Assembly: GCA_965202585.1 (NCBI GenBank)
Contig: OZ241828.1
Coordinates: forward strand, 24,490,001-24,554,000
Reading direction: 5' to 3'
DNA from: Thalia democratica
Taxonomy: Eukaryota
DNA: 64,000 bases
Position numbers and translations under genes: made by a program. Under the pieces are notes generated by a model. The model was not told the origin of the DNA. It searched no databases and was given only the letters and a program-made list of their open reading frames with translations. This document shows, piece by piece, positions 7,380 through 51,862 of this stretch (within the stretch, counting starts at the first letter, position 1; each line of letters starts with the position of its first letter).

Positions 7380-7850
7380 ATTCTATCTATGAAGGTCTTT
7401 TTAAAGTGAAAACACGTTAATTAGACTGTCATATACCGAGAATACTTCTGGTAAGCCTCTAAAAACAAAAAAAAATATTTTTGAATGCCACCGACTTGTG
7501 GCCATCTCTAATTTGCATAGTATTTGGCTCCTTAGGTCCTCAGGTCCAAAGGTTTCCCTCATGATCAAATACGTAACAAAAACTTATACTTCCAACTACC
7601 CCGTACACAACCGCTCTGTCTTGTGAAACCTTGCTGGCTGCCTTTCTTCTTACCCTTGTAGTTTTTCGCAATTGTTTTGTTTTGTCGTGCAAACTCCAAG
7701 CACGAGTCAACATTTTGCTCGTAAAACTACTTTCAAATCGCCATTTGTGTAGATTTTATCCTTAAGAGCGCAACGCTGAATGAACACCGATTAAATGGAA
7801 TCAGACCGACTCTTGTCGACTTGTTAGTTGTTGGAGTATACTTTGAAAAT
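7380..7850 (-). pseudogene. Kelch-repeat gene remnant K1 (downstream of family X copy A1)
   Basis: Homologous to 26173-26640. Minus-strand frames give DKIYTNG, DSCLEFARQN and RKAASKVSQDRAVVYG, with frameshifts and stops; Kelch blade pattern. Confidence 0.7.
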
Positions 7851-9329
7851 GTTGACAAATAGAATGATGTTAAAATACGGACAAAAAATTACAAAAGAAA
7901 TAAATCCGTGATACTTTGTATGAGAACTGTAATATAGTATGTATATTTTAAAAATTAGTCAAAATAGTCCATGAAATCCGTAAATATGAAAGTTAAACAA
8001 AGTTGATTAAAAAAAAATGATTTAAGTGAAATTGAAATGAAATAATTAAAAAAAGAATAGAAGATATATGAAGTAAGTAGCTGGATGACCGAAAAAAATT
8101 TTTATACGAAATATTTGAGCGTTAATATTTTTTGTGTCCAATAAACTAATAATGTAATAGAAATAAAAGAAAGTAGGGTACGAAGTTAAAAACATCAAAC
8201 AAGGTATAAAAAAAATTCTCTAACCTTAAGTTATCTAAGACTTTTTAACCTTTAATGCAATTAAGCTAAATTTCAATTAATTTAGCAAACTTTATGTTGT
8301 AAGTTTTCTTTATTAAAACTGTTGTGTTCACGATGCACATTATATTATACATAACTAGCAACTTATAAAAAATTCAAAATTTGTAAGAAAAACAAAAATT
8401 TAATTAAAAATTTAGTTATTTATATTAAGTAAAAAAATAAGTATAAAAGTTTTATTACTAAAATAAAACAGATATTTAGTATAAGTATGGTTTATTAACA
8501 AAGCGACGTATTGTTTTTTAAACTATGTATTTAGTTATTAGAAAGCATTTATATTTTTAAATGTTATATGGTTGAAAAATTAAAACGAGAACGCATATTC
8601 AAAACTGTGAAAATTGTCGTATTTGGAAAATTCACTTTTCTGTTAGAAGTTCGGCTGATTTCAAGTAGTTTTAAACTCTACATAAACAAAAAACATTTTT
8701 TTGGACACGTATTAGTCAGCTAAAATTTGTACTTTAAGATAAGTTTTACTAGAAAAATGCCAGCAACCAAAAAATTTAAACACTAGTTATTTTTTAATCG
8801 GTTTTGTGTACAAAGAAATAATAAAGTTTAACTATATAGTATTTATTTAGTTAATAGCGAATTTCAATAAATAACAAAGATGTTGAAAAAAAATCTTATT
8901 CAACATGCTTTTCATTATATACTAAAAAAAAAATATTTATCTTTTGTATTTTCATTCTATTAAGTCTTTATTTTATAAAATTATAAATGCCTTTTGATTA
9001 GAATAAGGAAAAAAAAAGCATTACTAGCATTTTAAAAAACAGTTTTACAAACTTAAAGTTAAAAAATATCTCAGTAAATTGTACCAATAAGACAAACAAT
9101 TTTTACCGACAATTTCACTTTGCAAAGTTAACATCAGATTTTATAACATAACACCAATGCACAACTTTAGACAAATTTAGTATAAACAGATTTGTATAAA
9201 TAAAACTCATATATACAAACTTTAATAATGAATTTTACTTTACGAAGACATAAATAAATTTATATCATAAAACAAATGTAGCTTTTATCAAAGTAAATCA
9301 AATTAACCTATCATAATTTATTTCAACAT

Positions 9330-10757
9330 CTAAAACCTAATCTTTTTACTTTTTAGGGGCTTGACATATTTCTTGAACTGGACTTTTTCTACATGCCTTT
9401 TCTTTTCATCACGGTTTTTACCTTGTTTAGTAATCGATTTATTTGGGAAGCAGCTCAATATTTCCAATCCATCAACACAAAAATCTACTTCATTTTTAGA
9501 AAATTTAGGTAAACTTCCTAAAAAATCATTAAAGTACCAACCCAGATGAAACGCTCCAGAAACACGAGATAACTTATTTGAAAATTCAAAAAAATACAAT
9601 TGAGCTTCACAGTAGTTCTTTTCTTCAAAATAAGTTAGAAAGTTTTTTACGTGTTTATACCATGTTCCCGACTTGAAACCGACATTCAACTCAATCGTTG
9701 GTGGGCTTTCAAAAAGTTTGTTGTTACTAAACAGCTCATCAAGTGATATAGAAATACATTTTTTGATACTTTTTAATAAATCAGAAAGAAATTTATACTC
9801 ATTTTGTTTAAAATTTAATGTTGTTGGCAAAAAAAAGTTTGCTTTTTTTCTATTGTTGATTCTATTTAATGATGTACCATATAGTTCATCATAAGTTAAA
9901 CTAAAAGGAAATGCTGACATAAAATTCATTTTTATCCCTTTAGATTCTCTGTTTGATAACTTAACTAAACAGTCTAAAAGATTTATAACATATAAAAACT
10001 TTTTAAAAAAACAGATTCTGTTTGAGCAACGTTCAGTTATTTTTGTTTTTTCAACAAAATATTTCTTGTTCTTAGTTGAGAACGAACGGACGCAATCATC
10101 GAAATATTTTTTAAGAATTTGGTTCACAGAGGTCATTGAGCTGAAGTGAATAGCAGTAAAGGACTTTTCAATTTCTACGTTGAGTACATCTGTGATTCCA
10201 TCACTTTTTAGTGTCTTTTAAAAAGCATGCTGGTTATTATAAGTATCTGTAATGTTTGTTGTACACCCTATCAAAATTGCAAAAGTTTTTTCTTTCCATT
10301 TAAAATTAACTTTTACTTCGTTTTTCAATGTTACATTATCTGAAGTTTTCAGCAGTTTTTGTCTATATATTTTTACTTGTATCTTCTTTTTAAACTTTTC
10401 TACCAAATACAACTTTTTCAAATGATATTTTTCTAGAAATTTTTTACTTTTGGTATTAAATGGGTATACATTTTTCTTATCTGCATATCTTTGTTTAATC
10501 AACTTTACAGATTCAATAGAAAACAAATGGACTTCAGCGTATCCTTTTGACTCAAGAAGCTCGTTTCTTTGAATTTCGACATCAATTATATTAGTGACAC
10601 CAATACTTTCAATTTTCTTCACAATTTCAAATTCACTTGAACCAGGGTCCAATCCACCAATGAAAAGCGAGTATTTGTTTCCATGGTAATCATACTTGAG
10701 AGACTTGTCCAAATAAGATTCTTCCGATTTCAAACTATCTTGAATATAAACCAGCAT
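9330..10757 (-). pseudogene. Family X copy A1 (RRM-RRM-unknown domain), one nonsense codon
   Basis: ATG at 10757 (MLVYIQDSL...). Track ORFs 10218..10757 and 9330..10136 are in one frame, separated only by TAA at 10218-10220 where copy A2 has AAA (HAF*KTLKSDG versus NAFKKTLKSDG). Confidence 0.85.
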
Positions 10758-12552
10758 ACTAGCTTCTAACTAACAACATATATACTACTATCAGAGAACA
10801 TTTAGTTACTAAAACTAACTTTTAAAATTAATGATGGCCTTAGCTTAAAATTAAAAATTTTAATGGTGTAGAAAGTATATTAGCAGACTTATTAATATTG
10901 TTAAGTATTTTTTTTCTCTATTTATTTTTAATTAAAAAATCTGCTAAGCACTACAAAATCTACAATTTTTTTTTACATAACGCAGAAGTTCAGAACAATA
11001 TAACAATGTTTACAGGTTTTATAAGTCTACCTACATGAAAAAAATAAAAATAAACGTTTTAAAAAAGAATCAATAAAAAATGCATTTAAAACTAAATAAT
11101 GTTTTATGTTTTAATTACTGCAATTTACATTGAGTCAAAACACAAAATATACATTTTTATTTTATATTTTTTCTCAACCTCACTTAAATTTGTATATGCT
11201 TTCTTATATGACATAGTGCACACAATTTGTTGAAATTATGAAAGATCACTAATTTTAAATTATAATGCCTATGCTGTTACTTACACTTTTTATTACTAAA
11301 TTCTTATTATTAATAATGTTAATTAATTTAAATAGTTATTTAATAACTAAAGTTTTGTATAAAATTTTAGACAACCATAGTAATTTAATAAATTTTACCA
11401 ATTTTAAATGTAGTATAAGTGATAAAGTAAAAACTTTTTAACATTTATATATTTAACTTAAAACAAAAGTGTTTATTTAAGTTAAATTTACTAACAGCAA
11501 ATTTAAAACATAATATAGTTAAAAATAAAAACAAAACGATTATCTAAGCCTAATATTAAAATGCACTTTTTTGCTTTTATTTCCGCTTACACATAAAATA
11601 TACGATAATTTATTAAGCAGGTTTGTTTTTATGTATTTATTTAATTCAAAAACGCAAATTTTTGTAAATCTAAATATAAAGTTTTTATTTCTTAGTAACT
11701 TAACTTAGCTTAATACACGTGTAATTTTTATCTTAAATGTATTCATTTCGATTATATCTAGTAAAGTATCATTCGGCTTAGTACAACAGCTAACCTTCTT
11801 TTGGGTTTATAGTTGAAAACGGAAGCTTCATGGTAAAAAAAATCTTTTTTAATCTAAATTTGTTCATGCTACATTTTTACTGCTCTTTGAACACGTCTTT
11901 GAACACTTAAATTTTGAGTATAAAAACTTTTATTTTAATTGCCGAGTTCGTGTTTCGTGACGAAACTATCCATAAAAGTTCATTGCTAATTTAAAAAAAA
12001 ATGATTTAAAGCTAAAATTTTGATATGAATATATCACAATTTTTACAAGTTGCATAAGTTTTGAAAACTAAGCATAACATTTTCGATGGTACTTAATAAA
12101 TCTAAATTATGCTGGTTATTGTAGATTTTGTAATTTATCAGTTTTATGATACATTGCTAGATTTATTAAGTGTTCAGCTTTCTAAAAGAGTTGAAAACTA
12201 ATAAACTTCTGAACAAAATTACTTAATTTTAAAATGTTTTTTTTTTCAACTGTTCTTTATAAACTTATCATCAAAGACTTTGTTGGACACTTATGCAAAA
12301 TTTTATTTTCCCTAAGGTGTCAAAACTTTGATAATTTAAAGAAATTTATGTTTTTCACTTAAATTTTTTTTTTTTTTTAAATAACAACAAATAAATATAT
12401 AAAATATTCCCCGAAAAAACTAGTATTCACAAACAAAATAAGTGTTAATTAATAATGATTTGTGTTTCTTTTTACTTGGTTGAACTAGATATAGCTTGTT
12501 TGTTAGCTAAAGGAATATGAAAGATCGCGCGATCTACAAAGTCCAAAGACTA

Positions 12553-12690
12553 TTAGTAAACTGTCATGTGCCTCAAATGTTTTTGCAAGCCTCTAAAAAC
12601 ACTGCGCATCCTGTATTTGATGTTAGTAAGTTCACAAGTCTCACCATCGAACACTTCAACAGTGTTTAAAACAAAACATATTTTTCTCAT
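12553..12690 (-). pseudogene. Kelch-repeat remnant K2 (internally deleted)
   Basis: Translates FVLNTVEVFDGETC...SVFRGLQ, homologous to K3 and K4 (LNSAEVFD...FVFGGLQ). Confidence 0.6.
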
Positions 12691-13836
12691 TTCGAAATAT
12701 TTGAGCGTTGATATTTTTAATGCATATAATAAACTAATCGTGTAATAAAAAAAACAGAGATCGAACTTTAACATCTAACAAAGTGTAAAGAAAAAAAGTT
12801 TACGGTATTTAGTTACCTTAGATTTAACTACTTTTTATATAGAAAGTTCAGTTAATTTTGCAAATTTTGTAATTTATTATAAAAAAGCTGTTACGTTCAC
12901 GATGCATATCATTAGTTATATTGCTAACAGCTTTCAAAACAAATCTTACAAGATAACGAAAATTGTTAAAAGAACAATTTACAATCTATAACAAATTAAT
13001 TTAAGTTAGAAAAATAGTAAGTATAGAAGTATTAGCGCAAAAAAAAAAAATTAATAAAAGTATATAATTTTAGCAAAGCGACAAACAAATAATTGATATT
13101 TTTAATTCATTTATTATTTATTTAACATTGTTTAATGTAATTTAAAAAGATAGTTTAAGCTTACTTTATTTAAATGCTATTTAATTTAATAATTAAGTTA
13201 ATATAAAATATTCAAAACCGAAGAATGCACCATATGTTTAATTTACTACACTGTTTTATACTCACCTAATTTATGTAGTTATAAGCTTTACATCGATACT
13301 TTTTTGACTTATTTGGTAATTAAAAAGTTTGTACTTAAGGTTAACTTAGTTATTAAAATTCGTTCAAAGCTAAAATTTTTAACAAGTAGTTTTAAAAACA
13401 CAGCAAAATTGATCCTGTGAAGGTTTTATTATCAATTTGTACAATTGAATGATGTAGTCTTACTTTTTAGTACTAATAGCCGTTTTTAATATAAAAGAAA
13501 ACTGTAGAAAAAATCTCATTATTAATACTTCTATTTATTTACTAAGTAATAAGACTACATTCTCTTTGTATTTTCATTGTATAAACTATTTATTTTATAA
13601 AGGTACATATCTCTTGTGGAGAATATAAAGAAAGAAATACAACTCTTATCTTATAAAACAATAAAAAATAAAAACACTTTAAATTAAAACACAATAAAGT
13701 GGAATGTACAAGTCAAAGTAAACAATTTTTTACCTATAGTTATACTTTGCAAAATTAAATAACAAATTTTATAACACATTAGTGCCTAAAAATTGTGACT
13801 TATCAAAGTATATAATGACGTTGATCTCATCAAATC

Positions 13837-15082
13837 TTATTTTAACAATTTAAATTCAATATTTTTACTTTTCATAGGCTTATTGTTGTGCTTGCATTGT
13901 ACTTCATTTTTTTTATATTGATCAATGGTTCTTTCACCGGGAAAACAACTCAATATTTCCAAGCCACTTACACAAAACCCTTCTTCTACTTTAGAAACCC
14001 AAGGTAAATATTTTGAAAATTTATCAAAACACCTTTCAGCTTTACTATAGTTCTTTTTCTTAAAACTGATTAGAAAGTATTTAACGAGTTCGTACCTTGG
14101 TTTCGTCTTAAACCCAACGTTCAACTCGATGTTTCGTGGACTTTCGTATATCTTGTTAATACTAAACAGCTCATCAAGGGAAATTAATACCCAATTTTTA
14201 ATACTTTTTGTTAAACCAGTAAGGAATTTTTGTTCACCTTTGATAAGATATTCAAACATCTTTTAATAACTCAAGTATTTTCTTTTTAATAGTGCATCTA
14301 TCATGGCTTTAGTTTTTAAGAACTTAATGAAAAAACAATTTTTATTTATGCAGCAGTCAAATTTTATTTGGTTTTCTACAAAATATTTTTTGTTTTTACT
14401 TGAAAACGAACGGACGCAGTTATCGTTTAAATATTTTTTAAGAATAAAATCAACAGAATTCATTGAACCAAAATAGATAACAGTAAGTGACTTTCCAAAT
14501 TTTACTTTAAGTACATCTGTAATGACATCATTTTTTAGTGTCATCTTAAAAGCAAACATATTTTAACATCCTCATCTGTTGTGTTTATAATTGTCCCGAT
14601 CAAAACTGCATATTGAGTTTCTTTCCATTTAAAATTAATTTTTTCTTCAGTTTTCAACTTCAAACTATCTGTGACTTTCAGCAGTTTTTGTCTATATGTT
14701 TCAACTTGTAATTCCTTTTCAAACTTTTCTACCAAATACAACTTTTTCAAATGGTACTCTGCAAGGTATGTTTAGCTTTTTGAATTAAATGAGTACACAT
14801 TTTTTTAACGGAGTTTCTTTCTTTAGTTAAACTTACAGATTCAATTAAAAACAAATGGACTTCAGCGTATCTTTTTGACTCAAGAAGCCCGTTCATTTGA
14901 GTTTTAACATCAGTTATATCAGTGACACCAATACTTTCAATTTTCATCACAATTCCAAATTCACTCATACTAGGAAGTAATCTACCAATGAAAAGCGAGT
15001 ATTTGTTACCATGGTAATCATACTTGAGAGATTTGTCCAAATAAGATTCTTCAAACATAAAACTATCTTGATGACTACTCAT
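13837..15082 (-). pseudogene. Family X copy B1, several frameshifts
   Basis: ATG at 15082 (MSSHQDSFMFEESYLDKSLKYDYHGNKYSLFIG). The family sequence is split across four successive track ORFs (14747..15082, 14541..14750, 14263..14559, 13837..14259) and reaches GLEILSCFP. Confidence 0.88.
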
Positions 15083-17199
15083 GCTAGAAAGCCTGCTATT
15101 TTTTTTTTTACTAAATTAATAAACTTATCAAAACCTTGACTTTTATCAATCCTAAGTGTTTTAATTGGTTTAACAATTTTAAAGGTAAAAAAAAAACATA
15201 TCTTCTAACACAAAAGTTAAATTTAAAGTAAATTTCTAAATGTGTAGAAAATATACAATAAGTAGACTTGTCTGTTAACAAGAAGTACTTTGAAATAAAT
15301 TTTTTTTATTCAAGCATTTTAAATAAAACAAAAATCATAAAAAAAAACATTTTTTTTCAAAGGATTACGAAAACAAATAAATTTCAAAACCTCTATACAT
15401 TTTTAAAGCACTATAAACTATATTGAGTCCATATCTTATTATACAGTACTTGTATTTTTGTTATTTAACCTCTCTTAAACTTGTGTTTGATTTGAAGTGT
15501 CTCAGAATAATAAAATATTTCAGCAAATGATGTAAAAAATATAAAGCTAACAGATCACTACAAAAACAATACCTTAGCTGATACTAAACATACTCAACAG
15601 AATAAATTTTCTGATATCTACGTACTTTTAATTTAACTTCTTACTTGAAAACAAATCTATCCAAAAAAATATATCTGTTAAAATGGTGTTAGAAATCTAT
15701 CTACATGAAAAAACTGACAATAAACTTTTTTTCTAGCTTGTCATTAAGAAGTAAATTTTAAAACGAATACTTTTTAAGCACTTTAAACTGCATTTAGTTA
15801 ACAAAAAAATATAAAATAGTTTATTGGTTTAGCTATTTTAGTTTTTATTTTTTTATTTTCACTTAAGTCTGTATTTGATTTTTAATATAACATAGTGCAC
15901 ATAATTTATTGGAATAAAATGAAAGCTCACTAAAATTTAAACTTTTATACTTTAGCTGATATTAAACATTTTTTTACTAAATTCTTTTCTATTATCTTCA
16001 TATTTAAATTAAACTTTTACTTAAAATAAAAGTTTTAGTTCTAGATCTAGATAACCATTTAGCAACATCTACCAATTTTATATGTTATAATCTACAGTTA
16101 TAATTTAAAGTAATTATTCTAAAAAACTCAAGTCTTAACATGTTTAGTTGAAAATAAAACAGTTAATTTAATTTTAACAACATTAACTTGAAAAAATTTT
16201 AATACAAAACTTAGTAAAAACAAAAACAAAACATTTTTTAATGTTATTTAACCTGTAAACATTGTAATAAAATCTAAGATAAAAACTTTGTTAAACAGCT
16301 CTTTTTACTTTGTAGAGTTTTAATTCAAAAACGCAAGTGTTTGTGGAACGAACTATAAAGTTTTAAATGTTTATTTTTTCAGCATAACATTTAAATATTT
16401 TCTATAAAAGTAAAAAAACTATTATGAATATTTTGTAAGTTTAAATACTAATGTTAAGCTAAATATTATTTAACATAAACAAAGGCTCTTAATTTTTGAT
16501 ACTGTGGTGAGAAATGGCAAATTTATGTTAAAAGTACAATCAGAAATTAATAATATTTGACTTCGTTAATGTTAGATTTTTTACATTGTTAACCTCAATT
16601 ATCCTCATGAATTATCAGAACATGTTGTTTTTTAGGAAACCCTAAAGTGACAAAACGTTTAATTAAATTCCATCAGTAACTGAGTGGAATGTTGGTTTTA
16701 AGTTTAAATATTATATGAAAGTTCAAAAGCTTTACTTGTTTAAAGTTTGAAAAATTTAGAATAACATTTTAGCTTGACAAGTTTATTAGTTATAAAATAC
16801 TTTACCAAATTAGTTTTAAATTTTAAAATGTTAGATCTCTTAAAATACTATATCACAGCTATTGAAAATTGTATGTATATACTTCATATATAAATTTATG
16901 TTATTACGTTGTTTTTTAATTTAAAAAATAGACTAAAACATTTTTTAGTTTTCCAATTATAGAAAATATAATTTATTTAAGTTTAATTAATTTATCTGAA
17001 AATTAAAATTAACATTTCAACGTTAAAAGTCTCCTTAACCATTTCCTCATGGTTTTCACAACTTATTAAAACATATTTTAATAATTTATAAAACCCTTTA
17101 ATTAAACCTAAGCTTAGAACTATCGACTAAAACAAAAAATGCACAAGTTTAAAGACTACAAGACTAACAATGAGAATCATAATTTAAAATTTCAAGTTG

Positions 17200-17640
17200 G
17201 TATTTAAAATGCAAATGCTGTCAAGTTGGTAAAACTTCACTTCCCTTTGATTAAATGCCAGAATTTACGATGATCGAAGTTTTATTTACGGTAACGCGGA
17301 TCATGAAAAGTGTGCAGAAAATCAACACTTTCCAACTACGATGCCTTATTCATAGAACTTGATTCTTAGATCTTACAAAAGGTCACCAAAAGGCAAGTGT
17401 TGGTATGCACTCGCCTCAGCCAGTTCAAACATGTTATAAAAATCGGCGACAAGTAAAGGATATGAACCTAAAAGGTATGTTGTACACCTAGTTCATTTAA
17501 AACAAAGTTTTAACTTCTGAGCGCGAATTATCTTAAATAAAACCAACTATGAATCAGAGGAGTTTGCTGATGACGCGAAAAATATCAAAGTTATACAAAA
17601 ACATGAAAGAGAGAGAAGAAGAAACACCTTTAAACACTTA
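17200..17640. other. Unassigned GC-elevated segment conserved in blocks 1 and 3 (possible decayed gene)
   Basis: Clear paralog at about 50320-50800. Minus strand reads ESVDFLHTFHDPRYRK*NFDHRKFWHLIKGK*SFTNLTAF; no family recognised. Confidence 0.4.
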
Positions 17641-17771
17641 AGTAGACGAATAAACAAAAATTACAAATAGACTTTTTTTTTGTTTTATGATACTTTCTTG
17701 CATCACTGTGTTTGTGTGTGTTTTAGTAATTGTTTTTTTTATTACGCAACATAACACTTTTATGTTAAACA

Positions 17772-18170
17772 TTAAATTTCGATTATCGAGTCTGGAGGCA
17801 ACTCAATGCTCGGTTCTAACTCGATAATATCCGGTTTGAATTTTCTTCATTCTGCATTGTACTCGTGTCCTCTTTATTAAGATTCGAAGTCCAAGCTACT
17901 GTTTTTCCACATTCAGGAAATTTGCTGTTATTTTCATCGAAACAGTTAGAATGAAAATATAGCCCGTAGCTGGTCTATATTAACGGAAATTTTTGTTTAA
18001 TTTCCTTCAAATCTACAATACTGTGACTTTCTTCATTTTGTTGCATTTAAGGCAGAAATCGTAAAGGCTGCTTTTGCAAATGTATGAAATATCTGTTTGT
18101 TTTTCCTTTATACATCCAGACAATTTTCTTGTTTTGCTGAAAACGTTCCAAAAAATATCCCATAAACCAT
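17772..18170 (-). pseudogene. RBX1/APC11-like RING-H2 gene remnant R1
   Basis: ATG at 18170, TAA at 17772-17774. Across frameshifts reads W...DISYICKSSLYDFCLKC...KFPLI*TSYGLYFHSNCFDENNSKFPECGKTVAW, compared with RBX1 W..DNCAICRNHIMDLCIEC...C.VAWG.CNHAFHFHCI..W....CP....W. Confidence 0.68.
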
Positions 18171-18881
18171 GATTTTGATATTGTTTATTGTTAAACTTAA
18201 ATATTATATAATTTTTTATTGAACGATTACACTAAAGTTAAAAATATACGAACATTTACAAAAATTTACATAGACATAAAATATTATACATACAAATATA
18301 AATATAGTTTTGTTTATTTTTTATTTTGACTTTCAAATAGTTTGCTTCCACGTATTACTACCATGGAAATAAATGTAAATTAATTAGTTATTTTAAATAA
18401 AATTAAATGTTATAATATTAATCTTGGTCTACATTGTCATACGCATTAAAAAACTTTTAAGGTTGAAATATCATCATTTAATGATATTCGAGAAATGCTT
18501 AAAACATCTTTTAAAAACTAATTTTACTAGTTTTGTACTCTATGAATTATTTACGTTTAAACTAGTTTAACAGAAAACAAAGATATTTTCATTATTCAAA
18601 TTTAACAATGTTCTAATGATTAATAACTACTTTTTAATTATAGTAAGTGTTTTAATTGACTCGAATAAAAAAATTATGCAAACTTTATGCAACATTTTTG
18701 TACAATTTTTTAAACAATTTTGTGTCGACTAAAAATTGACATCTGAAAGAGTTAGTGACGAAACTTGAAACTTCCAGGAATTTTTTAGACTATTTGAGAT
18801 ATATGTACGATTTCATTTTGGAGTCGCAATGGATTAAACACGTAATTTGTGGAGCGTTGCTTTCCAGTAAGTAAGAGAAGA

Positions 18882-33726: not shown

Positions 33727-34080
33727 CTAAGGGAAAATAAGAGATCTACAAAGTCCAAAGACTATTAGTAAACTGTCTTGTACCTCAAATGTTTTTTGCA
33801 GGCCTCTGAAAACACTGTGCATCCTGTATTTGATATTAGTAAGTCCACAAGTTTGCCTCACCATCGAACGTCTCAACATTGTTTTAAACAAAACTTCTTT
33901 TTTTAACTTTTCCTCGCACACAACCACTCTGCATTGAAAAACCTTACTTGCTGCTCTTTTAATTTTCCGCTCGTGTTTCGTTTTATCATGCAGAAATCCG
34001 AGCACCAGTCAACAGATCGCTTGTAAAACTACTTTTAATCCGCCAATTATGTAGATTTTATCCATGAGTGCGCAAACGCT
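33727..34080 (-). pseudogene. Kelch-repeat remnant K4
   Basis: Reads CALMDKIYIIGG (canonical Kelch GG), then LGFLHDKTKH...RAASKVFQCRVVVC and SVFRGLQKTFEV, with frameshifts. Confidence 0.75.
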
Positions 34081-41799: not shown

Positions 41800-42065
41800 A
41801 AAACTGATCTCAACACTTTAACCTTAACCCTTTTACTTTTCAAGGGCTTGACATATTTCTTGTATTGTAGTTTTTTTACATGCTATTTCTTTTTACCACA
41901 CTTTTTACGTTGGGTAGTGATCGGTTTATTCGGGAAACAAATAAATATTTCCAATCCATCAACACAAAAATCTTCATCATTTTTAGAAAATTCAGGAGAA
42001 CTTCCTAAAAAATTATCAAAATACCTACCAGCACAAACAACTGCTTCAGAAACCCAAGGTTTCAA
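41800..42065 (-). pseudogene. Family X C-terminal fragment
   Basis: Translates PWVSEAVVCAGRYFDNFLGSSPEFSKNDEDFCVDGLEIFICFPNKPITTQRKKCGKKK*HVKKLQYKKYVKPLKSKRV. Confidence 0.85.
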
Positions 42066-42540
42066 ATTTTACATAAAAAAAAAAAAATTTTTTGGACATG
42101 TGTTAGTCGGTTAAAATTTGTACTTAAGATTTAATTTACTAGAAAGTTTCTAACAACCAAAAAATTTAAACTTTAGTAAAAGTCTAACTGTATGGTACTT
42201 ACTTAGTTTAATAGCAAATTCTAAAAATAAACAAAAAAAAAAGGTTGTAGTAAAAACTTTATAACACTTGCTTTTAGTAGTATACTAAAAAAAAAACTAA
42301 TTATTTTTTGTATTTTCATTCTATAAAGTCTTTATTTTATAAAATTATAAGTACCTTTTGATTAAAATAAAGAAAAAAAATCATTGCTATAATTAAAAAG
42401 ATATAGTTTTACTAATCAAAAAATGTAGAAACAAATTATACAAATAAAGATAAACAATTTTACTTTGCTAAGTTTATCAGATTTTATTAACATTACACAA
42501 CTTTAGATTTGTTAAATATATGATGTTGATCTTATCAAAA

Positions 42541-43982
42541 CTATCTCAACTTTTTATACTTAAAATTTTTACTTTTCATAGGCTTGTCATTTTTCTTATA
42601 CTTTACTTTTTCTAAATGGCATTTCTTTTTACCACACTTTTTACGTTGGGTAGTGATCGGTTTATTTGGGAAGCAACTCAATATTTCCAATCCATCAACA
42701 CAAAAATCTACTTCATTTTTAGAAAATTCAGGTAAACTTTCTAAAAAATCATTAAAGTACCAACCTAGATGAAACGCTCCAGAAAACGAGATAACTTATT
42801 TGAAAATTCAAAAAAATACAATTGAGCTTCACTGTAGTTCTTTTCTTCAAAAGAGATTAGAAAGTTTTTTACGTATTCATACCATGTTTCCGATTTAAAA
42901 CCGACATTCAACTCAATCGCTTGTGGATTTTAAAAAAGCTTGTTATTACTAAACAGCTCATCAAGTGATATTGAAATCCATTTTTTGATACTTTTTAATA
43001 AATCAGAAAGAAATTTATACTCAATTTGTTTAAAAGTTAATGCTGTTGGCGAAAAAAAGTTTGCTTTTTTTCTATCGTTAATTTCATCTAATGATGTACC
43101 ATATAGTTCACGAAAACTTAAACTAAAAGGAAATTTTGACAAAAAATTCAATTTTTTCCTTCTAGATTCTCTGTTTAATAACTTCACTAAGCAGTCTACA
43201 AGATTTATAATATATAAAAACTTTCTAAAAAAACAGATTCTGTTTGAGCAACGTTCAATTATTTTTGTTTTTTCAACAAAATATTTCTTATTCTTAGTTG
43301 AAAACGAACGGACGCAATTATCATCGAAATACTTTTTAAGAATTTGGTTCACAGAGGTCACTGAGCTGAAGTGAATAGCAGTAAAGGACTTTTCAATGTC
43401 TACGTTGAGTACATCTGTGATTCCATCACTTTTTAGTGTCTTTTTAAAAACGTTCTGGTTATCATTGTTATCTCTAATGTTTGTTGTACACCCGATTAAA
43501 ATTGCAAAAGTTTTTTCTTTCCATTTAAAATTAACTTTTACTTCGTTTTTCAATGTTACATTATCTTAAGTTTTCAGCAGTTTTTGTCTATATATTTTTA
43601 CTTGTATCTTCTTTTTAAACTTTTCTACCAAATACAACTGTTTCAAATGATACTCTTCTAGAAATTTTTTACTTTTGGTATTAAATGGGTATACATTTTT
43701 CTTATCAACATATCTTTGTTTAATCAACTTTACAGATTCAATAGAAAACAAATGGACTTCAGCGTAATTTTTTGACAGAAGAAACTTGTTTCTTTGAATT
43801 TTGACATCAATTATATCAGTGACACCAATACTTTCAATTTTCTTCACAATTTCAAATTAACTTGAACCAGGGTCCAATCCACCAATGAAAAGCGAGTATT
43901 TGTTTCCATGGTAATCATACTTGAGAGATTTCTCCAAATAAGATTCTTCCGATTTCAAACTACCTTGAATATAAAGCAGCAT
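42541..43982 (-). pseudogene. Family X copy A3, several nonsense codons and a frameshift
   Basis: ATG at 43982 (MLLYIQGSL...). Stops at GSS*FEI (about 43857), LLKT*DN (43566) and KLF*NP (42930), plus a 2-nt deletion near 42785. Confidence 0.88.
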
Positions 43983-45558
43983 ACTAACTTCTAACTAACA
44001 ACATATATACTACTATCAGAGAACATTTAGTTACTAAAACTAACTTTTAAAATTAATGATGGCCTTAGTTTAAAATTAAAAACTTTAACGGTGTAGAAAG
44101 TATATTAGCAGACTTATTAATATTGTTAAGTATTTTTTTATCTAGTTATTTTTAATTAAAAAATCTGCTAAGCACTACAAAATCTACAATTTTGTTTTAC
44201 ATAACGCAGAAGTTAAGAACAATATAACAATGTTTACAGGTTTTATAAGTCTATCTACATGAAAAAAATAAAAATAAACGTTTTAAAAAAGTATCAATAA
44301 AAAATACATTTAAAACTAAATAATGTTTTATGTTTTAATTACTGCAATTTATATTGAGTCAAAACACAAAATATACATTTTTATTTTATATTTTTTCTCA
44401 ACCTCACTTAAATCTGTATATGCTTTCTTATATGACATAGTGCACACAATTTGTTGAAATTATGAAAGATCACTAATTTTAAATTATAATGCCTATGCTG
44501 TTACTTACACGTTTTATTACTAAATTCTTATCATTAATAATGTTAATTAATTTAAATAGTTATTTAATAACTAAAGTTTTGTATAAAATTTTAGACACCC
44601 ATAGTAATTTAATAAATTTTACCAATTTTAAATGTAGTATAAGTGATAAAGTAAAAACTTTTTAACATTTATATATTTAACTTAAAACAAAAGTGTTTAT
44701 TTAAGTTAAATTTACAAAAGCAAATTTAAAACATAATATAGTTAAAAATAAAAACAAAACGATTATCTAAGCCTAATATTAAAATGCACTTTTTTGCTTT
44801 TATTTCCGCTTACACATAAAATATACGATAATTTATTAAGCAGGTTTGTTTTTGTGTATTTATTTAATTCAAAAACGCAAATTTTTGTAAATCTAAATAT
44901 AAAGTTTTTATTTCTTAGTAACTTAACTTAGCTTAATATACGTGTAATTTTTATCTTAAATGTATTCATTTCGATTATACCTAGTAAGGTATCATTCGGC
45001 TTAGAACAACAGCTAAGCTTCTTTTGATTTTGTAGTTGAAAATGGAAGCTTCATGTTAAAAACAAATCTTTTTTAATCTAAATTTGTTCATGCTACATTT
45101 TTACTGCTCTTTGAACACGTCTATGAACACTTAAATTTTGAGTATAAAAACTTTTATTTTTATTGTTGAGTTCGTGTTTTGTGATGAAACTATCCATAAA
45201 AGTTCATTACTAATAAAAAAAAAAGATTTTAAACTAAAATGTTGGTATGAATATATCACAATATTTACAACTTGTATAAGTTTTGAAAAGTAAGCATAAA
45301 ATTTTCGATGGTACTTAATAAATCTAAATTATGCTGGTTATTGTATATTTTATAGTTTATCAGTTTTCTAATATATTGCTAGATTTATTTAATGTTTAAC
45401 TTTCTAGAGAGTTGAAAATTAATAAACTTTTGAACAAAATAAATCCATTTTAAAGTATTTTTTCAACTGTTCTTTATAAATAAATCTTCAAAGACTTTGT
45501 TGGACACTTATGCAAAATTTTACTTTCCCTAAGGTGTCAAAATTTAAACAAAAGCATA

Positions 45559-45635
45559 AGTCAACAGAATGCACGCACACTACTTTCAAACCGCCAATTA
45601 TGTAGGCTTTATCCATAAGAGCGCAAACGCTAATT
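45559..45635 (-). pseudogene. Kelch remnant K5 (mostly deleted)
   Basis: Matches the 5' end of K4 (ttAG|cgtttgcgctct...GATAAAGCCTACATAATTGGCGG; DKAYIIGG). Confidence 0.55.
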
Positions 45636-47001
45636 AATAAATAAATTTAGAAAATAAAGATATGATGCTATGAATGACGACTGTAAATAAGTAAATTACA
45701 ATAATAAGTCAAAAAGTACATGAAATCCACAAAAATTAAAATTAAATAAAGTTAATCCATAAAAAAAATATTAGTTATTTATTAAATGTAATTAGTTAGT
45801 TAATTTAATAAAGAATAAAAGAGGTATGTAGTAAGTAGCTCGATATCCGAAAATGTTTTTTATACGAAATACGTGAGCGTTGATAATTTTGTTGTATATA
45901 ATAAACTAATCGTGTAATAAAAAAAAAACAGAGATCGAACTTAGAAACATCTATTAAAGTGTAAAGAAAAAAGTTTACGGTATATAGTTACCTTAGATTT
46001 AATTACTTTTTATATAGAAACTTCAGTTAATTATGCAAATTTTGTAATTTATTATATAAAAGCTGTTATATTCACGATGCATATCATTTCTTACATTGTT
46101 AACAACTTACAAAAACAATCATGCAAGAAAACAAAAATTGTTGAAAGAACAATATAGTAATCTATAGCAAATTCACTTTAGTTAAAAAATATAAAGTAAG
46201 TATAGAAATTTTAGCCCAAAAAATAGTTTAATATAAGCATATAATTTTAGCAAAGCGACAAATATATAATTGATTTTTTAAATTCATTTAATATTTGTTT
46301 AACATTGTTAGTGTGTTTGATGTTATTGAAAAGATAGTTTAACCTTATTTAAATGCTGCTTGATTAGATAATCATAAGTTAAAGAAAAAGTTCAAAACCG
46401 TAGAATACACCATATTTTTTCAATTAACTTAATTGTTTCACACTCAGCAAGTTTTATGTAGTTTTAAGCTTTACTTCGATAAAAATAACTTCGATACTTT
46501 TTTTTTTGTTGGTTAGTTATTAAAAATCAAAAAATAAGTTTTAAAACACGTCTTGTTAAGGTATTTATTATTTTAAAAATGTAAAAACGAATTCAATTGC
46601 CTTATTTTATAGTACTAGTTGCAGTTTTGAATTCAATGTTTGTAGAAAATACTCATAGCAGATACGTTAATTTATCTACTAGATAATAAAACTACTCACT
46701 TTGTATTTCATTGTATAAGGTAGTTATTTTATAAAAATACAATTCCTTTGTGCAGAATATAAATAAATACAACTCTTATTTTATAAAACAATAAGAACTA
46801 AAAACACTTAGAATTAAAACATAATAAATCAAATTGTACAAGTTAAAGTAAACAATTTTTTACTTACAGTTATACCTTGCAAAAATTAATAACAAATTTT
46901 ATAACAAATTAGTGCGTAACAATTGTGACTTATCAATGTATATCATGACGTTGATCTCATCAAAACTTATTTCAACAATTTATATTTAATGTTTATACTT
47001 T

Positions 47002-48241
47002 TCATGGGCTTAACATATTTCCTGTATACTTTTTCTGCATGGCCTTATTTTCATGTTGATAAATGACCTGTTTATCTTGGAAACAACTCAATATTTCCAA
47101 ACCAGTAGCAAAAAACTTTTTAACCTTTAGAAAACCTTTAGAAACCCGAGATAATTCACTTGAAAATTGATCAAAATATCTTTCAGCTAGACCATAGTTC
47201 TTTTCTTTAAAATAGATTAAAAAGTTTTTTACGTGTTCGTACCATGTTTTCGACTTAAACCCGACATTTAACTCAATCATTGATGGACTCTCATAAAGCT
47301 TGTTATTACAAAACTTTTCGCTGAGCGATATTGATATCCATTTTTTAATACTTTTTAGTAAATCAGTAAGAAAGTTTTTTTCACCTTTGAAATGATATTT
47401 ACTCATTTCGAAATTTTTTGTTACCATGTTCATCTGTTTTCTTTTTTAATGATTCATCTACCATAGCTCTAGTGTTTAAGTACTTAAGGAAAAAACAGTT
47501 TTTGGTTATGCGACAGTTTAAATTTATTGGGTTTTCAATAAAATATTTTTTATTCTTTTCTGAAAACGAGCAGACACAATTGTCGTCTAAATATTTTTTG
47601 AGAACAATTTCAACAGAATTTATTGAACCAAAATAAATAACAGTAAATGTCTTTTCAAATTTTAGGTTGAGTACATCTGTAATGCCATCATTTTCTAGTA
47701 TAATTTTAAATGCTGATCTATTTTTAGTATCATCTGTAGCTTTTCTTGTGGTCCTGATCAAAACTGCGAATTGAGTTTCTTTCCATTTAAAATAAACTTT
47801 TTCTTCGGTTTTCAACTTCAAACTATCTGTGACTTTCAGCAGTTTTTGTCTATATGTTTCAACTTGTAATTCCTTTTTAAGCTTTTCTACCAAATACAAC
47901 TTTTTAAAATGAAGTTCTTCAAGAAACTTTTTGCTTTGTGAATTAAATGAGTACACATTTTTCTTATCGGAATATCTTTGTTTAACTAAGCTTACAGATT
48001 CAATTGAAAACAAATGGACTTCAGCGTATCTTTTTGACTTAAGAAGCTCATTTCTTTGAATTTTGACATCAATTATATCAGTGACACCAATACTTTCTAT
48101 TTTCTTTACAATTTCAAATTCACTCATACTAGGAAGTAATCCACCAATGAAAAGCGAGTATTTGTTACCATGGTAATCATACTTGAGAGATTTGTCCAAA
48201 TAAGATTCTTCAAACATAAAACTATCTTGATGACTACTCAT
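47002..48241 (-). pseudogene. Family X copy B3, single +1 frameshift
   Basis: ATG at 48241, 280-aa frame; the family sequence continues in track ORF 47002..47433. One extra base in a T-run at about 47443-47448 relative to B2; could be an assembly error. Confidence 0.8.
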
Positions 48242-50408
48242 GCTAGAAAGCCTGCTAATTTTTTTTTACTAAATCAATAAACTTATCAAAACCTTGACTT
48301 TTATCAATCCTAAGTGTTTTTATTGGTTTAATATTTTAAAGGTAAAAAAAAAACATATCTTCTAACACAAAAGTTAAATTTAAAGTAAAAATCTAAATGT
48401 GTAGAAAATATACAATAAGTAGACTTATCTGTTTAAAAGAAGTACTTTAAACTATTTTTTTTTATTCAAGCATTTTAAATAAAACAAAAACCATTAAAAA
48501 AACATTTTTTTTCAAAGGCTTACGAATACAAATAAACTTCAAAACCTCTATACATTTTTAAAGCACTATAAACTATATTGAGTCAATATCTTATTGTACA
48601 GTACTTGTTTTTTTATTTATTTAGGCTCACTTAAACTTGTGTTTGATTTGAAGTGTCTCAGAATTATAAAACGTATTAGCACATGATGTAAAAAATATAA
48701 AGCTAACAGATCACTACAAAAACAATACCTTAGCTGATACTAAATATACTCAACAAAATAAATTTTCTGATATCTACATACTTTTAATTTAACTTCTTAC
48801 TCGAAAACCAATCTATCTAAAAAAATATATCTGTTAAAATGGTGTTAAAATATATCTACATGAAAAAACTGATAAGAATTTATTTTTTAGCTTATCATTA
48901 AAATGTAAATTTTAAAACGTGTATTTTTAAGCACTTTAAACTGTATTAAGTTAACAAAAAAATTATAAAATAGTTTATTGGTTTTACTATTTTAGTTTTT
49001 ATTTTCTTATTTTCATTTAAGTCTGTATTAGATTTTTAATATAACATAGTGCACATAATTTTTTGGAATAAAATGAAAGATCACTAAAATTTAAACTTTA
49101 ATACCTTAGCTGATACTAGACATTTTTTTACTAAAGTCTTTTCTAATATCTACATATTTAAATTAAACTTTTACTTAAAATAAAAGTTTTCATTCTAGAC
49201 AACCATTTAGCAACATCTACCAATTTTAGATGTTATAATCTACAGTTACAATTTAAAGTAATTAATCTAAAAAAACTCAAGTCTTAATATGTTTAGCTGA
49301 AAATAAAACTGTTAATTTAATTTTAACAACATTATTCTTTAACACAAAACTTAGTAAAAACAAAAACAAAACATTTTTTAATGTTATCTAACCTGTAAAC
49401 ATTGTAATAAAATCTAAGTTAAAAACCTTGTTATATAGTTCTTTTTATTTTGTAGAGTTTTAATTTAAAAACGCAATTGTTTGTGAAATGAACTATAGAG
49501 TTTTTAATGTTTTTTTAGAATAATATTTAATTATTTCTTATAAAAGTAATATAAATATTATGAATATTTTCTAAGTTTAAATTCTAAGACGAGCTTAATA
49601 TTATTTAATTTAAATAAAAGCTCTTAATTTTTGATTTTGTGGTGAACAATGGCAAATTTATGTTAAAAGTTCAATCATAAATTAGTAATATTTCACATCG
49701 TTAATGTTAGGTTTTTTATTTAGTTTGCCTCAATTATTCTCATGATTTATCAAAACATGTTTTATTTTTAGGAAATTCTTCAGTGACAAAACGTTTATTG
49801 AAACTCCATCAGTAACTGAGTGTAATGTTTATTTTAAGTTTAAATACTATATGAAGGTTCAAAAGCTTTACTTGTTTAAAGTTTGAAAAATTTAGAATAG
49901 CATTTTAACTGGACAAGTTTATCAGTTTTACTTCACCAAATTAATTTTAGATTTAAATTATTAGATCTTTTAGAATACGATATCACAGCTAATGAAAATT
50001 GTATGTTTATACTTGATATATAAATTTGTGTTTTTACGTTTTATTTTTTAAATTTAAAGATAGGCTAAAATAAATTTCAGCTTCACAATTATAGATAATC
50101 TAATTTATTTAAGTTTAATTGATTCATCTGTGAATAAAAAAACTCTCACAATTTAATGTTAAAATTCTCCTTTACCATTTCCTCATGGTTTTCACAACTT
50201 ATTAAAACATATTTTAATAATTTTTAAACTCTTTAATTAAACCTAGCTTAGAACTATCGACTAAAACAAAGAAAGTGCACAAGTTTATAGACTAACAACG
50301 AGAAAAATAATTTAAAGTAAAAGCTGTCATATTGGTAAAACTTCACTTTCATTCGACTAAATGCCAGAATTTACGATGAACGAAGTTTTATTTACGGTAA
50401 CGCGGACC

Positions 50409-50480
50409 ATGATAAGTGTGCAGAAAATGATAAGTTTGCAGAAAATGATAAGTGTGCAGAAAATGATAAGTGTGCAGAAA
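50409..50480. repeat. 18-bp tandem repeat x4 (ATGATAAGTGTGCAGAAA) inside the block-3 copy of the unassigned segment (about 50320-50800)
   Basis: Four units are read directly; the block-1 paralog has one unit (atgaaaagtgtgcagaaa, about 17304-17321). Confidence 0.9.
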
Positions 50481-50942
50481 ATCAACACTTTCCACCTAAG
50501 GTGTCCCTGCCTTATTCATAGAACTTGATTCTTAGATCTTACAAAAGGTCACCAACTAGCAAGTGTTGAAATAGAATTCCTTAACCAATTTGAACATGTT
50601 ATAAGAATTGGCGACAAGTGAAGGATATGAACCCAAAAGGTATGTTGTACACCTAGTTGGTCTAAAACAAAGTTTTAACACATCTTCTGAGCGCTAATTA
50701 TCTTGAATATAATCAAGTATGATTGAGGGGAGTTTGCTAATGACGCGACAAATATCAAAGTTATACCTACAAAAGGATGATAGAGAGAAAAATTAAATAC
50801 TAAATAAAAATTAAGTTGATGAATAAACCAAAGTTTCAAATAGATTTCATTTTTATTATTTCATACTTTCTTGCATCATTGTGGCTGTCTGATTATAGTA
50901 TTTTTTGAGCACATCTTGACATTTTTATCCAATTGCCAAACA

Positions 50943-51334
50943 TTAAAGTTCAATTATTGAGTCTGGAGGCAACTCAATGCTCGGCTCCAACTCAATAATA
51001 TCAGGTTTAATTTTTTTTCATTCTGCATTTTACTTGTACTTTTTTATTTAGTTTCGAAGTCCAAGCAATCGTTTTTCCACATTCGGGACATTTACTAATT
51101 ATTTCATCGAAACAGTGCGAATGAAAATAGTGTCCACGGCTGGTCATTAACGGGCATTTTTGTTCGTTTTTTTTTCAAATCTTCAATACTTTGATTTTCT
51201 TCTTTTTGTTTACATTTAACGCAGAAATCGTAAGTTCTGTTTTTGAAGGTGTAGCAAATATATGTTTGTTTTTACTTTTTACAGTAACACATCTTATTTT
51301 GCTGATAGAGTTCCAAAAAAAACTTATAATCCAT
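50943..51334 (-). pseudogene. RBX1/APC11-like RING-H2 gene remnant R2
   Basis: ATG at 51334, TAA at 50943-50945. Across frameshifts reads ICY...YDFCVKC...KCPLMTSRGHYFHSHCFDEIISKCPECGKTIAW...PDIIELEPSIELPPDSIIEL; FHSHC mirrors RBX1 FHFHC. Confidence 0.72.
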
Positions 51335-51862
51335 GATTTTGATGTTTATTAATAAACAAAAGTATTAATACTTTTTTTTATTGAACGAATACATAAAAAA
51401 TATTCGAACATTTATAAAAATCGACATAGAAATAAAATATTTTACAAAAAAAAACATAAATATAGTTCTGTTTGTTTTTGATTTGGACAAACAGTTTGCT
51501 TCCACGTATTACTACCATGGAAATAGAAATAAAATTATCAGTTAATTTATATAAAATTAAATGTTATAATATTAATTTTGATCTACATTGTAATACGCCT
51601 TGAAAAACTTTTAAGGTTGAAATATCATTAACTAATGATATTCGAAAAATGCTTAAAACATCTTTTAAAAACTAATTTTCATCAGTTTTCTATTTTTTAT
51701 ATTATTTACCTTTAATTTAGTTTTAACAAAGATATTTTTACCATTTAAAGTCAACAGTTTTCTTTAGATTTTCAGTACTTTTCAAACATGTATTAATTAT
51801 ACCAAGGTTTGTGAAGTTGATCGGTTTATTTGTGAAGTTTTTGTACATGCTATTTATTTTTA

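What the first reader, a model, noticed from the sequence alone, without database searches (positions are those of the whole stretch)
7380..51760. Higher-order cassette Kelch - X(A) - Kelch - X(B) - unknown - RING-H2, amplified about three times
Seen: block 1 (about 7.4-18.7 kb), block 2 (about 26.2-37.4 kb, with a hAT insertion and cut before the RING) and block 3 (about 42.1-51.7 kb) share gene order, strand and long intergenic homology. Five of the six A/B copies (all except A3) have a Kelch remnant about 1.1-1.6 kb downstream, and B1 and B3 have an RBX1/APC11-like RING remnant upstream. Established: BTB-Kelch proteins and RBX1 are the adaptor and RING subunits of CUL3 ligases. Inference: an RNA-binding-protein plus ubiquitin-ligase module co-amplified as a unit (for example germline RNA surveillance or a conflict system). 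Passive hitchhiking is the alternative, and the Kelch and RING genes are more decayed than family X.
Basis: partly seen in the sequence, partly recalled or inferred. Interest (0 to 1): 0.75.

Follow-up and report, generated by a model that had tools for sequence, protein, structure and literature searches.

The report
Decayed edge of RRM-RING gene array
The three repeated blocks are real, but they are the dead near end of a much larger (about 180 kb) tandem array of two marine-animal-specific gene families: a protein with a CPSF6-like RRM domain and a small RBX1-like RING finger; the Kelch pieces are fossil fragments carried along passively.

Summary
Observation partly confirmed. Blocks 7396-18637, 26183-37406 (with a 2.4-kb hAT-type insertion) and 42437-51785 share order, strand and 82-93% identity. 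They are the edge of a mosaic array of at least 24 X copies and 17 RING copies, spanning window coordinates 9 k to 185 k, plus contig C165.

- **X:** an intronless orphan of 415-470 aa, with a CPSF6/7-type RRM, a second RRM fold and a helical tail of unknown fold. It has only 18 relatives among 1.84 billion protein cluster representatives.
- **RING:** passes the zf-rbx1 cut-off and keeps all zinc ligands, but lacks the RBX1 strand that docks onto cullins. This subfamily occurs only in this array.
- **State of the copies:** all seven X copies and both RING copies in the window are broken. Seven X and four RING copies further along are intact, with dN/dS below 1.
- **Kelch:** one 107-codon open fragment and three decayed homologues (4 of 6 copies, not 5). 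There is no BTB/BACK and no intact Kelch or cullin gene in 234 kb.
- **"Unknown" slot:** it holds no conserved ORF.

The ubiquitin link is partly supported. The X-type RRM is fused to a CUL3-like cullin in a relative, and X abuts RING in a marine metagenome contig. However, X and RING distances are not congruent, and no RNA data exist. Earlier scan notes on other DNA of this genome had already found the RRM-cullin fusion and cullin-less RING families.

The parts
7396..18637 (-). Block 1 (A1 + B1 + RING remnant)
   Evidence: Self-BLASTN: 7396-11832 matches 26183-30661 at 90%; 12693-18637 matches 45865-51785 at 81.6%.
26183..37406 (-). Block 2 (A2 + B2), interrupted by a transposon and ending before the RING
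   Evidence: no RING match in 37.4-42 kb.
42437..51785 (-). Block 3 (A3 + B3 + RING remnant)
   Evidence: 9212-12328 matches 42437-45545 at 92.4%; 34001-37406 matches 45553-48917 at 90.8%.
9321..10757 (-). X copy A1, pseudogene (split into ORFs of 179 and 268 aa)
13840..15082 (-). X copy B1, pseudogene (four ORF pieces of 111, 69, 98 and 140 aa)
28169..29617 (-). X copy A2. It keeps a 470-codon open frame, but the conserved ATG reads ATT, and the first in-frame ATG removes strand 1 of RRM1.
35483..36720 (-). X copy B2, pseudogene (N-terminal part out of frame)
41808..43967 (-). X copy A3 plus an extra 3' fragment, pseudogene (longest ATG ORF 41 aa)
46970..48241 (-). X copy B3, pseudogene (ORFs of 280 and 143 aa)
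51893..52744 (-). X copy C1: an RRM1-only ORF of 114 aa followed by decayed C-terminal pieces. It starts a further repeat that recurs at window coordinates 92.1 k and 148.7 k.
17775..18163 (-). RBX1-like RING-H2 remnant (frameshifted), upstream of B1
   Evidence: TBLASTN with intact array RING ORFs, E about 1e-28.
50946..51322 (-). RBX1-like RING-H2 remnant (frameshifted), upstream of B3
   Evidence: E about 5e-33.
26176..26496 (-). Kelch fragment: 107 open codons, about 1.5-2 blades, no start codon, lying at the edge of the repeat unit
   Evidence: Pfam Kelch_1 at 25.8 bits (cut-off 20.1). phmmer E = 2e-9 to an intact Kelch ORF of this genome.
7389..7706 (-). Decayed homologue of the Kelch fragment (stops and frameshifts)
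   Evidence: TBLASTN E = 1e-10 to the A2 fragment and 76% DNA identity. Not recognisable as Kelch on its own.
33757..33973 (-). Decayed homologue of the Kelch fragment, downstream of B2
   Evidence: E = 3e-7.
12633..12681 (-). About 15-residue trace of the Kelch fragment, downstream of B1
   Evidence: DNA 79% identical over 53 bases. Pfam finds nothing.
30663..33058 (.). Non-autonomous hAT-like transposon. The 8-bp target duplications lie at 30655-30662 and 33059-33066.
   Evidence: target duplication, inverted repeats, empty site at about 11830 in block 1. No transposase ORF. Very high copy number in DNA runs.

Best explanation
The window holds the proximal, decayed end of a roughly 180-kb tandem array (C4:24.497-24.675 Mb, plus unplaced contig C165). 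The array grew by overlapping segmental duplications or unequal crossing-over, not by copying one fixed cassette.

Two lineage-restricted gene families are interleaved in it:
- **X:** intronless, 415-470 aa, all copies on the minus strand. It has an N-terminal RRM derived from the CPSF6/CPSF7 (CFIm68/59) type, a second RRM fold and a helical tail of unknown fold.
- **RING:** a 106-131-aa RBX1-like RING-H2 protein that keeps every zinc ligand but lacks the N-terminal strand by which RBX1 docks into a cullin.

Living copies (seven X, including three short forms without RRM2, and four RING) lie beyond the window and evolve under purifying selection. The window's seven X copies and two RING copies are pseudogenes.

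The Kelch pieces all descend from one truncated Kelch fragment without BTB/BACK at the edge of the duplicated segment and were copied passively.

Inferred, not shown: RRM1 of X is a protein-binding module, as in CFIm68/59, that works with this animal's greatly expanded ubiquitin-ligase machinery. The array RING would be a cullin-independent E2 recruiter.
For: - **Array extent and mosaic structure:**
- **X is an orphan:** no Pfam family at E <= 0.01; 2 hits among 5.8 billion proteins; 18 hits among 1.84 billion representatives.
- **RRM1 is CPSF6/7-type:** the deep search reaches a CPSF6 orthologue (P0015, RRM_1 + RSLD_CPSF6). BLASTP gives 38% identity, E = 2e-10. The only PDB sequence hits are the CPSF7 and CPSF6 RRMs. 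Foldseek gives TM 0.71-0.76 to the CFIm68/59 RRMs, plus tandem-RRM proteins. The genome's own CPSF6 matches X copies at 33-40%.
- **RING:** zf-rbx1 at 39.3 bits against a cut-off of 31. Zinc ligands are conserved but the docking strand is absent. The subfamily is confined to the array and C165. 13 of 17 copies lie 1.7-4.8 kb upstream of an X copy on the same strand.
- **Selection:** RING dN/dS is 0.19-0.38; whole X is 0.54-0.69 and RRM1 is 0.19-0.43. Bootstrap intervals for all three lie below 1.
- **Link to the ubiquitin system:** the X-type RRM is fused to a CUL3-like cullin on metagenome contig L001, and two dead copies sit on C5. X and RING sequence abut on marine metagenome contig L045, which is about 74-83% identical to the array.
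- **Kelch is passive:** there is a single fragment family, no BTB/BACK, and no intact Kelch gene in 234 kb. The genome background is very high, with 6829 Kelch candidates.
Against: - No RNA run exists for this organism, so no copy is shown to be expressed.
- Only one unit (window coordinates 157-161 k) has both an intact X and an intact RING.
- X and RING distance matrices are uncorrelated (Mantel r = 0.04, P = 0.36), so nothing shows co-evolution.
- The structure models are weak (pLDDT 47 and 60), and the C-terminal domain matches no known fold.
- dN/dS by the Nei-Gojobori method in 25% GC DNA is approximate.
- The L045 junction comes from one low-coverage contig and truncates both genes.
Confidence: 0.6

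Rival explanations
1. Pure hitchhiking. X and the RING are functionally unrelated genes that happened to be neighbours when the locus began to duplicate. Their interleaving reflects descent from that arrangement only.
For: - X and RING distances are not congruent.
- Breakpoints differ between duplications.
- Most copies of both families are dead.
- The Kelch fragment shows that unrelated DNA is carried along in this array.
Against: - The RING subfamily occurs only inside this array, yet it is kept under purifying selection at dS up to 0.89.
- The same RRM type is independently fused to a CUL3-like cullin.
- X and RING sequence are adjacent in a second genome.
Confidence: 0.28
2. One reading: a working CUL3-type module (BTB-Kelch adaptor + RBX1 RING + RNA-binding X) amplified as one cassette.
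For: - A Kelch_1 motif passes the cut-off at 26176-26496.
- The RING is RBX1-like.
- The cullin fused to the X-type RRM is CUL3-like.
Against: - No BTB/BACK is present.
- Kelch is only a 107-codon fragment and its decayed copies, and there is no intact Kelch gene in 234 kb.
- The RING lacks the cullin-docking strand.
- No cullin lies in the array.
- There is no fixed cassette.
- All window copies are broken.
Confidence: 0.07
3. X and RING are cargo of a large mobile element or an integrated virus.
For: - The genes are intronless.
- The copy number is high.
- Atlas feature hits for the X tail include giant-virus hypothetical proteins at scores of 0.84-0.85, below the level that is meaningful.
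Against: - Copies are confined to one locus (plus C165 and a degenerate cluster 1.5 Mb away), all in one orientation.
- No terminal repeats or transposase lie around the units.
- Intronless genes are common in this genome, including its own CPSF6 and its cullins.
Confidence: 0.03

Closest known systems
CPSF6 / CPSF7 (CFIm68/59) RRM
   Same: X RRM1 shares the motif ahead of strand 1 (Y-x-Y-x-G-N/K-K), the RNP2-like and RNP1-like stretches and the beta-alpha-beta-beta-alpha-beta fold. These RRMs are the only PDB sequence hits and the best single-domain Foldseek hits.
   Different: X has no proline-rich region and no RSLD domain. It carries a second RRM fold and an unrelated helical tail, is multi-copy and fast-evolving, and is only 33-40% identical to the genome's own CPSF6.
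RBX1 / RBX2 / APC11 RING-H2 subunits
   Same: All ligands of the three zinc sites and the conserved tryptophan are present, and the zf-rbx1 cut-off is passed.
   Different: The N-terminal strand that inserts into the cullin C-terminal domain is missing. The copies carry short, variable N- and C-terminal tails, and the subfamily exists only in this array. Similar cullin-less RBX-like RINGs were noted elsewhere in this genome by the scan (s1-311243; those copies were not checked here).
Birth-and-death tandem clusters of ubiquitin-ligase-related genes (TRIM clusters of primates, PMC3228819; F-box and BTB expansions of nematodes, from my own knowledge)
   Same: Tandem array at one locus, with many pseudogenes beside a few selected copies, a mosaic of segmental duplications, and one conserved domain joined to a faster-evolving remainder.
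   Different: The amplified protein is not itself an E3 or a known adaptor. It is an orphan with a CPSF6-type RRM. The E3-like part is a separate small gene.
RRM-CUL3-like fusion gene (metagenome contig L001; dead copies on C5; scan note s1-301216)
   Same: Its RRM is 51-65% identical to X RRM1, far closer than to CPSF6 (37%).
   Different: After about residue 150 it continues into a cullin from about cullin residue 50 onwards, not into RRM2 and the helical tail. On L001 the two halves are in different frames; I searched them apart and did not join them.

Membership tests
CUL3 / BTB-Kelch / RBX1 ligase module | BTB and BACK domains N-terminal to the Kelch propeller | tested here: not met
   Pfam and six-frame inspection of the 1.7-kb stretch between the Kelch fragment and X found nothing. 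The sampled intact Kelch ORFs of this genome also lack BTB.
CUL3 / BTB-Kelch / RBX1 ligase module | Complete six-blade Kelch propeller ORF | tested here: not met
   Only a 107-codon fragment and three decayed copies in the window. TBLASTN found no intact Kelch in 234 kb.
CUL3 / BTB-Kelch / RBX1 ligase module | A cullin gene linked to the module | tested here: not met
   Genome-wide cullin searches give no hit in C4:24.47-24.70 Mb.
RBX1/APC11-type RING-H2 | RING-H2 with the extra zinc site (all Cys/His ligands) | tested here: met
   zf-rbx1 at 39.3 bits against a cut-off of 31, matching profile positions 1-54. Invariant ligands seen in the alignment with RBX1-like proteins of the same genome.
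RBX1/APC11-type RING-H2 | N-terminal beta-strand that docks into the cullin or APC2 C-terminal domain | tested here: not met
   The segment present in the canonical RBX1 exon (L012) and the RBX-like L015 has no counterpart in the four array RINGs.
CPSF6/7-type RRM protein | RRM with specific sequence similarity to CPSF6/7 | tested here: met
CPSF6/7-type RRM protein | Proline-rich region and C-terminal RS-like (RSLD) domain | tested here: not met
   No Pfam family at E <= 0.01 for six X ORFs, whereas the orthologue P0015 shows RSLD_CPSF6.
CPSF6/7-type RRM protein | Binding of the RRM to the CFIm25 (NUDT21) dimer | not testable with these tools
   Needs a binding assay or a multimer prediction.
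hAT transposon | 8-bp target-site duplication and short terminal inverted repeats | tested here: met
   CTTTATGT on both sides, 11/12 matching inverted repeats, and an empty site in block 1.
hAT transposon | hAT transposase ORF | tested here: not met
   No ORF over 61 aa inside the element. It is therefore at best a non-autonomous member.
Birth-and-death tandem gene family | Same-orientation tandem copies that mix selected intact genes with pseudogenes | tested here: met

The most novel reading that the evidence does not exclude
The free-standing X proteins, the array-specific cullin-less RBX1-like RINGs and the RRM-CUL3-like fusion are parts of one undescribed ubiquitin-ligase system of pelagic tunicates. 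In it, a CPSF6-type RRM has been recruited as the recognition module (for CFIm25-like or foreign proteins, or for RNA). It would be diversified by tandem birth-and-death evolution in the way that conflict or immune gene families are.
Probability: 0.2. Interest if true: 0.75.

Novelty: new variant of a known kind. Interest (0 to 1): 0.45.

Why it matters
If X and the RING work together, this would be the first case of a CPSF6-type RRM used as a recognition domain for ubiquitin ligases. It would add a defined and testable piece to the unusually large expansion of ligase parts in this animal (Kelch, cullin, RBX-like RING).

For annotation, the practical point is that the window itself holds only pseudogenes. 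The genes to study lie 40 to 130 kb further along the chromosome.

Tried and rejected
- **BTB/BACK in the spacer:** nothing found.
- **Kelch remnant for B3:** absent; there is a deletion at that place.
- **A gene in the 'unknown' slot:** no ORF is shared between nine spacers.
- **Origin by insertion of X into a RING-coiled-coil-Kelch gene** (a family noted by the scan): the array RING finds no such RINGs, only array copies and one RBX-like gene on C6.
- **Co-duplication of X with its downstream RING:** rejected by uncorrelated distances.
- **Link of the X-type RRM to the RRM-Ulp1 protease genes noted by the scan:** no C48 protease lies near any X-type RRM locus.
- **Fold of the C-terminal domain:** no match.
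- **Expression:** no RNA runs exist, and the three DNA runs gave only short contigs.
- **Synteny in relatives:** the JGI metagenome scan was empty and the ENA contigs are under 3 kb.
- **Literature:** two searches found no description of such a family.
- **Rfam:** no hits in the window.
- **Loci not inspected:** The second X cluster (C4:25.97-26.23 Mb) and the C10 Kelch-RING-cullin cluster were therefore not looked at.
Full report
**Setting.** The window is G000:C4:24490001-24554000 of an 800-Mb, AT-rich genome; the window has about 26% GC. The genome is an animal's: a canonical, intron-containing RBX1 and a CPSF6 orthologue are present. Relatives of the genes studied here turn up only in marine metagenomes, including Tara Oceans. 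Earlier scan notes call the organism a pelagic tunicate (salp). I did not verify that.

**Observation.** Self-BLASTN confirms the three blocks:
- Block 1 is 7396-18637, block 2 is 26183-37406 and block 3 is 42437-51785.
- The A halves are 90-93% identical and the B halves 82-91%.
- The X cores of A and B are 78-80% identical, and their flanks about 65-70%.
- Block 2 is interrupted at 30663-33058 by an element with an 8-bp target duplication, 11/12 terminal inverted repeats and an empty site in block 1. It has no transposase ORF and is extremely abundant in DNA runs. It is therefore a non-autonomous hAT-like element.

The window is only the edge of the structure. A whole-genome search and 234 kb of fetched flanking sequence show 27 X copies or fragments, all on the minus strand, from window coordinates 9.3 k to 177.6 k. 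There are more on unplaced contig C165 and in a degenerate cluster at C4:25.97-26.23 Mb. Long matches have many different offsets and breakpoints, so this is a mosaic of overlapping segmental duplications rather than three copies of one cassette.

**Family X.**
- It is an intronless ORF of 415-470 aa with no Pfam family at E <= 0.01.
- The word search found two relatives among 5.8 billion proteins. A profile search of 1.84 billion cluster representatives found 18, mostly short fragments from marine metagenomes.
- The weaker hits include a CPSF6 orthologue, P0015 (RRM_1 plus RSLD_CPSF6). BLASTP of X against it gives 38% identity over the RRM, E = 2e-10.
- The only PDB sequence hits are the CPSF7 and CPSF6 RRMs. 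The genome's own CPSF6, an intronless 492-aa ORF on C10, matches X copies at 33-40%.
- An AlphaFold model from 13 sequences is poor overall (pLDDT 47). It does show two beta-alpha-beta-beta-alpha-beta folds at residues 20-100 and 150-235.
- Foldseek returns tandem-RRM proteins and, for domain 1, the CFIm68/59 RRMs at TM 0.71-0.76.
- The C-terminal 170 residues model as helices (pLDDT 60) with no fold match. Atlas leads are below meaningful scores.
- In the alignments, X, like CPSF6, departs from the canonical RNP1 aromatic positions. The solved CPSF6/7 RRM structures are complexes with the 25-kDa CFIm subunit (entry titles). 'RNA-binding protein' is therefore an assumption, not a result.

**State of the X copies.**
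- In the window, none of the seven copies has a clean ATG-to-stop frame.
- A2 keeps 470 open codons, but its conserved ATG reads ATT.
- Outside the window, four full-length copies (415-455 aa) and three short forms without RRM2 (295-301 aa) are intact, and C165 carries one of 457 aa.
- Among intact copies, dN/dS is 0.54-0.69 overall and 0.19-0.43 in RRM1, with bootstrap intervals below 1 for both. The remainder is 0.61-0.78, and two of five intervals there reach 1.

**RING.**
- TBLASTN with intact array ORFs finds frameshifted remnants at 17775-18163 and 50946-51322, and 15 further copies along the array.
- Four copies are intact ORFs of 106-131 aa.
- One scores 39.3 bits on zf-rbx1 against a cut-off of 31, covering profile positions 1-54.
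- Aligned with the genome's RBX1 exon and an RBX-like protein, all zinc ligands are invariant. The N-terminal strand that docks RBX1 into a cullin is absent.
- The subfamily is found only in this array and on C165. The nearest outside relative is 41% identical.
- dN/dS is 0.19-0.38 at dS up to 0.89.
- Two open relatives, 84% and 69% identical, occur in marine metagenomes.
- Thirteen of the 17 copies lie 1.7-4.8 kb upstream of an X copy on the same strand.

**Kelch.**
- Only 26176-26496 (minus strand, 107 open codons, no start) is recognisably Kelch: Kelch_1 at 25.8 bits and phmmer E = 2e-9 to an intact Kelch ORF.
- It sits exactly at the edge of the repeat unit.
- Decayed homologues lie at 7389-7706, 33757-33973 and, as a 15-residue trace, 12633-12681. 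B3 has a deletion there and A3 starts beyond it.
- Nothing BTB- or BACK-like lies in the spacer.
- The 234 kb hold no intact Kelch gene.
- The genome has 6829 candidate Kelch motifs, and the four sampled Kelch ORFs are BTB-less.
- The Kelch pieces are therefore one truncated fragment copied passively.

**The 'unknown' slot.** Nine spacers between X and RING share no ORF. The slot is intergenic DNA.

**Link to ubiquitin ligases.** Three lines of evidence bear on it.
- *Fusion to a cullin.* P0002, on metagenome contig L001, starts with an X-type RRM that is 51-65% identical to array copies but only 37% identical to CPSF6. It continues into a cullin from about cullin residue 50. A second frame on the same contig carries the rest of the cullin, with the neddylation domain. 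The two frames differ by a frameshift; I searched them apart and did not join them. The cullin's closest intact paralogue in this genome is CUL3-like: 399 bits to CUL3 against 276 to CUL4A. G000 holds two dead copies of the fusion on C5.
- *Confinement of the RING.* The RING subfamily exists only next to X.
- *Adjacency in a second genome.* Metagenome contig L045, about 74-83% identical to the array, joins X sequence and RING sequence within 12 bases, in opposite orientation and with both truncated.

Against a tight partnership:
- Pairwise distances of X copies and of their upstream RINGs are uncorrelated (Mantel r = 0.04, P = 0.36).
- Only one unit has both genes intact.
- No cullin lies in the array.
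- No RNA data exist.

**Verdict.** The repeat is real, but the window holds only a graveyard end of a larger birth-and-death array of an orphan RRM protein and a cullin-dock-less RBX1-like RING. The CUL3/BTB-Kelch/RBX1 cassette reading fails its membership tests. A looser link between the X-type RRM and the ubiquitin system is plausible and testable.

The scan had already noted the RRM-cullin fusion (s1-301216), cullin-less RBX-like RINGs (s1-311243) and the Kelch expansions on other DNA of this genome. The look-ups I ran did not turn up the free-standing X array and its private RING subfamily.

Noticed in passing
window 59655-60088 and 63421-63784: Two arrays of a 15-bp satellite (about 29 and 24 copies) lie in inverted orientation 3.3 kb apart. 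They may be the arms of a larger element.
   Followed up: no
window 20878-21432: A 78-bp tandem repeat (2.5 copies) is overlapped by ORFs of 110-133 aa on both strands. There is no convincing Pfam match.
   Followed up: partly
window 50850-57889: This segment recurs at window coordinates 91.1-96.4 k and 148.1-154.6 k at 90-96% identity. It carries a RING remnant, an open RRM1-only ORF of 114 aa (52400-52744), and ORFs of 123 aa (54806-55177) and 99 aa (55397-55696) without any Pfam family.
   Followed up: partly
L017:5675-6559, L018:2683-3585, L020:1106-1990 (window coordinates 69.7 k, 86.7 k, 125.1 k): Three intact short forms of X (295-301 aa) lack RRM2 but keep RRM1 and the helical tail.
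   Followed up: partly
L045 (marine metagenome contig, 840 bases): X sequence (positions 2-501) and RING sequence (positions 513-840) are joined within 12 bases, in opposite orientation and with both truncated.
   Followed up: partly
G000:C10:26.66-26.92 Mb: Tandem Kelch ORFs, a RING ORF and three or more CUL3-like cullin genes lie within about 260 kb. These cullins are the closest paralogues, after the C8 pair, of the cullin fused to the X-type RRM.
   Followed up: no
G000:C4:25.97-26.23 Mb: A second, degenerate cluster holds X RRM1 fragments on both strands, with no array-type RING.
   Followed up: no
G000:C10:31239493-31240941: The genome's own CPSF6 orthologue is a single intronless ORF of 492 aa. 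Dozens of cullin ORFs of 680-780 aa are also intronless.
   Followed up: no
L034:6854-7246 and L035:5802-6194: Two of the intact RING proteins start with Met-Gly followed by a Cys-Cys-Cys run. This may indicate lipid anchoring. The two plus-strand copies lack this feature.
   Followed up: no
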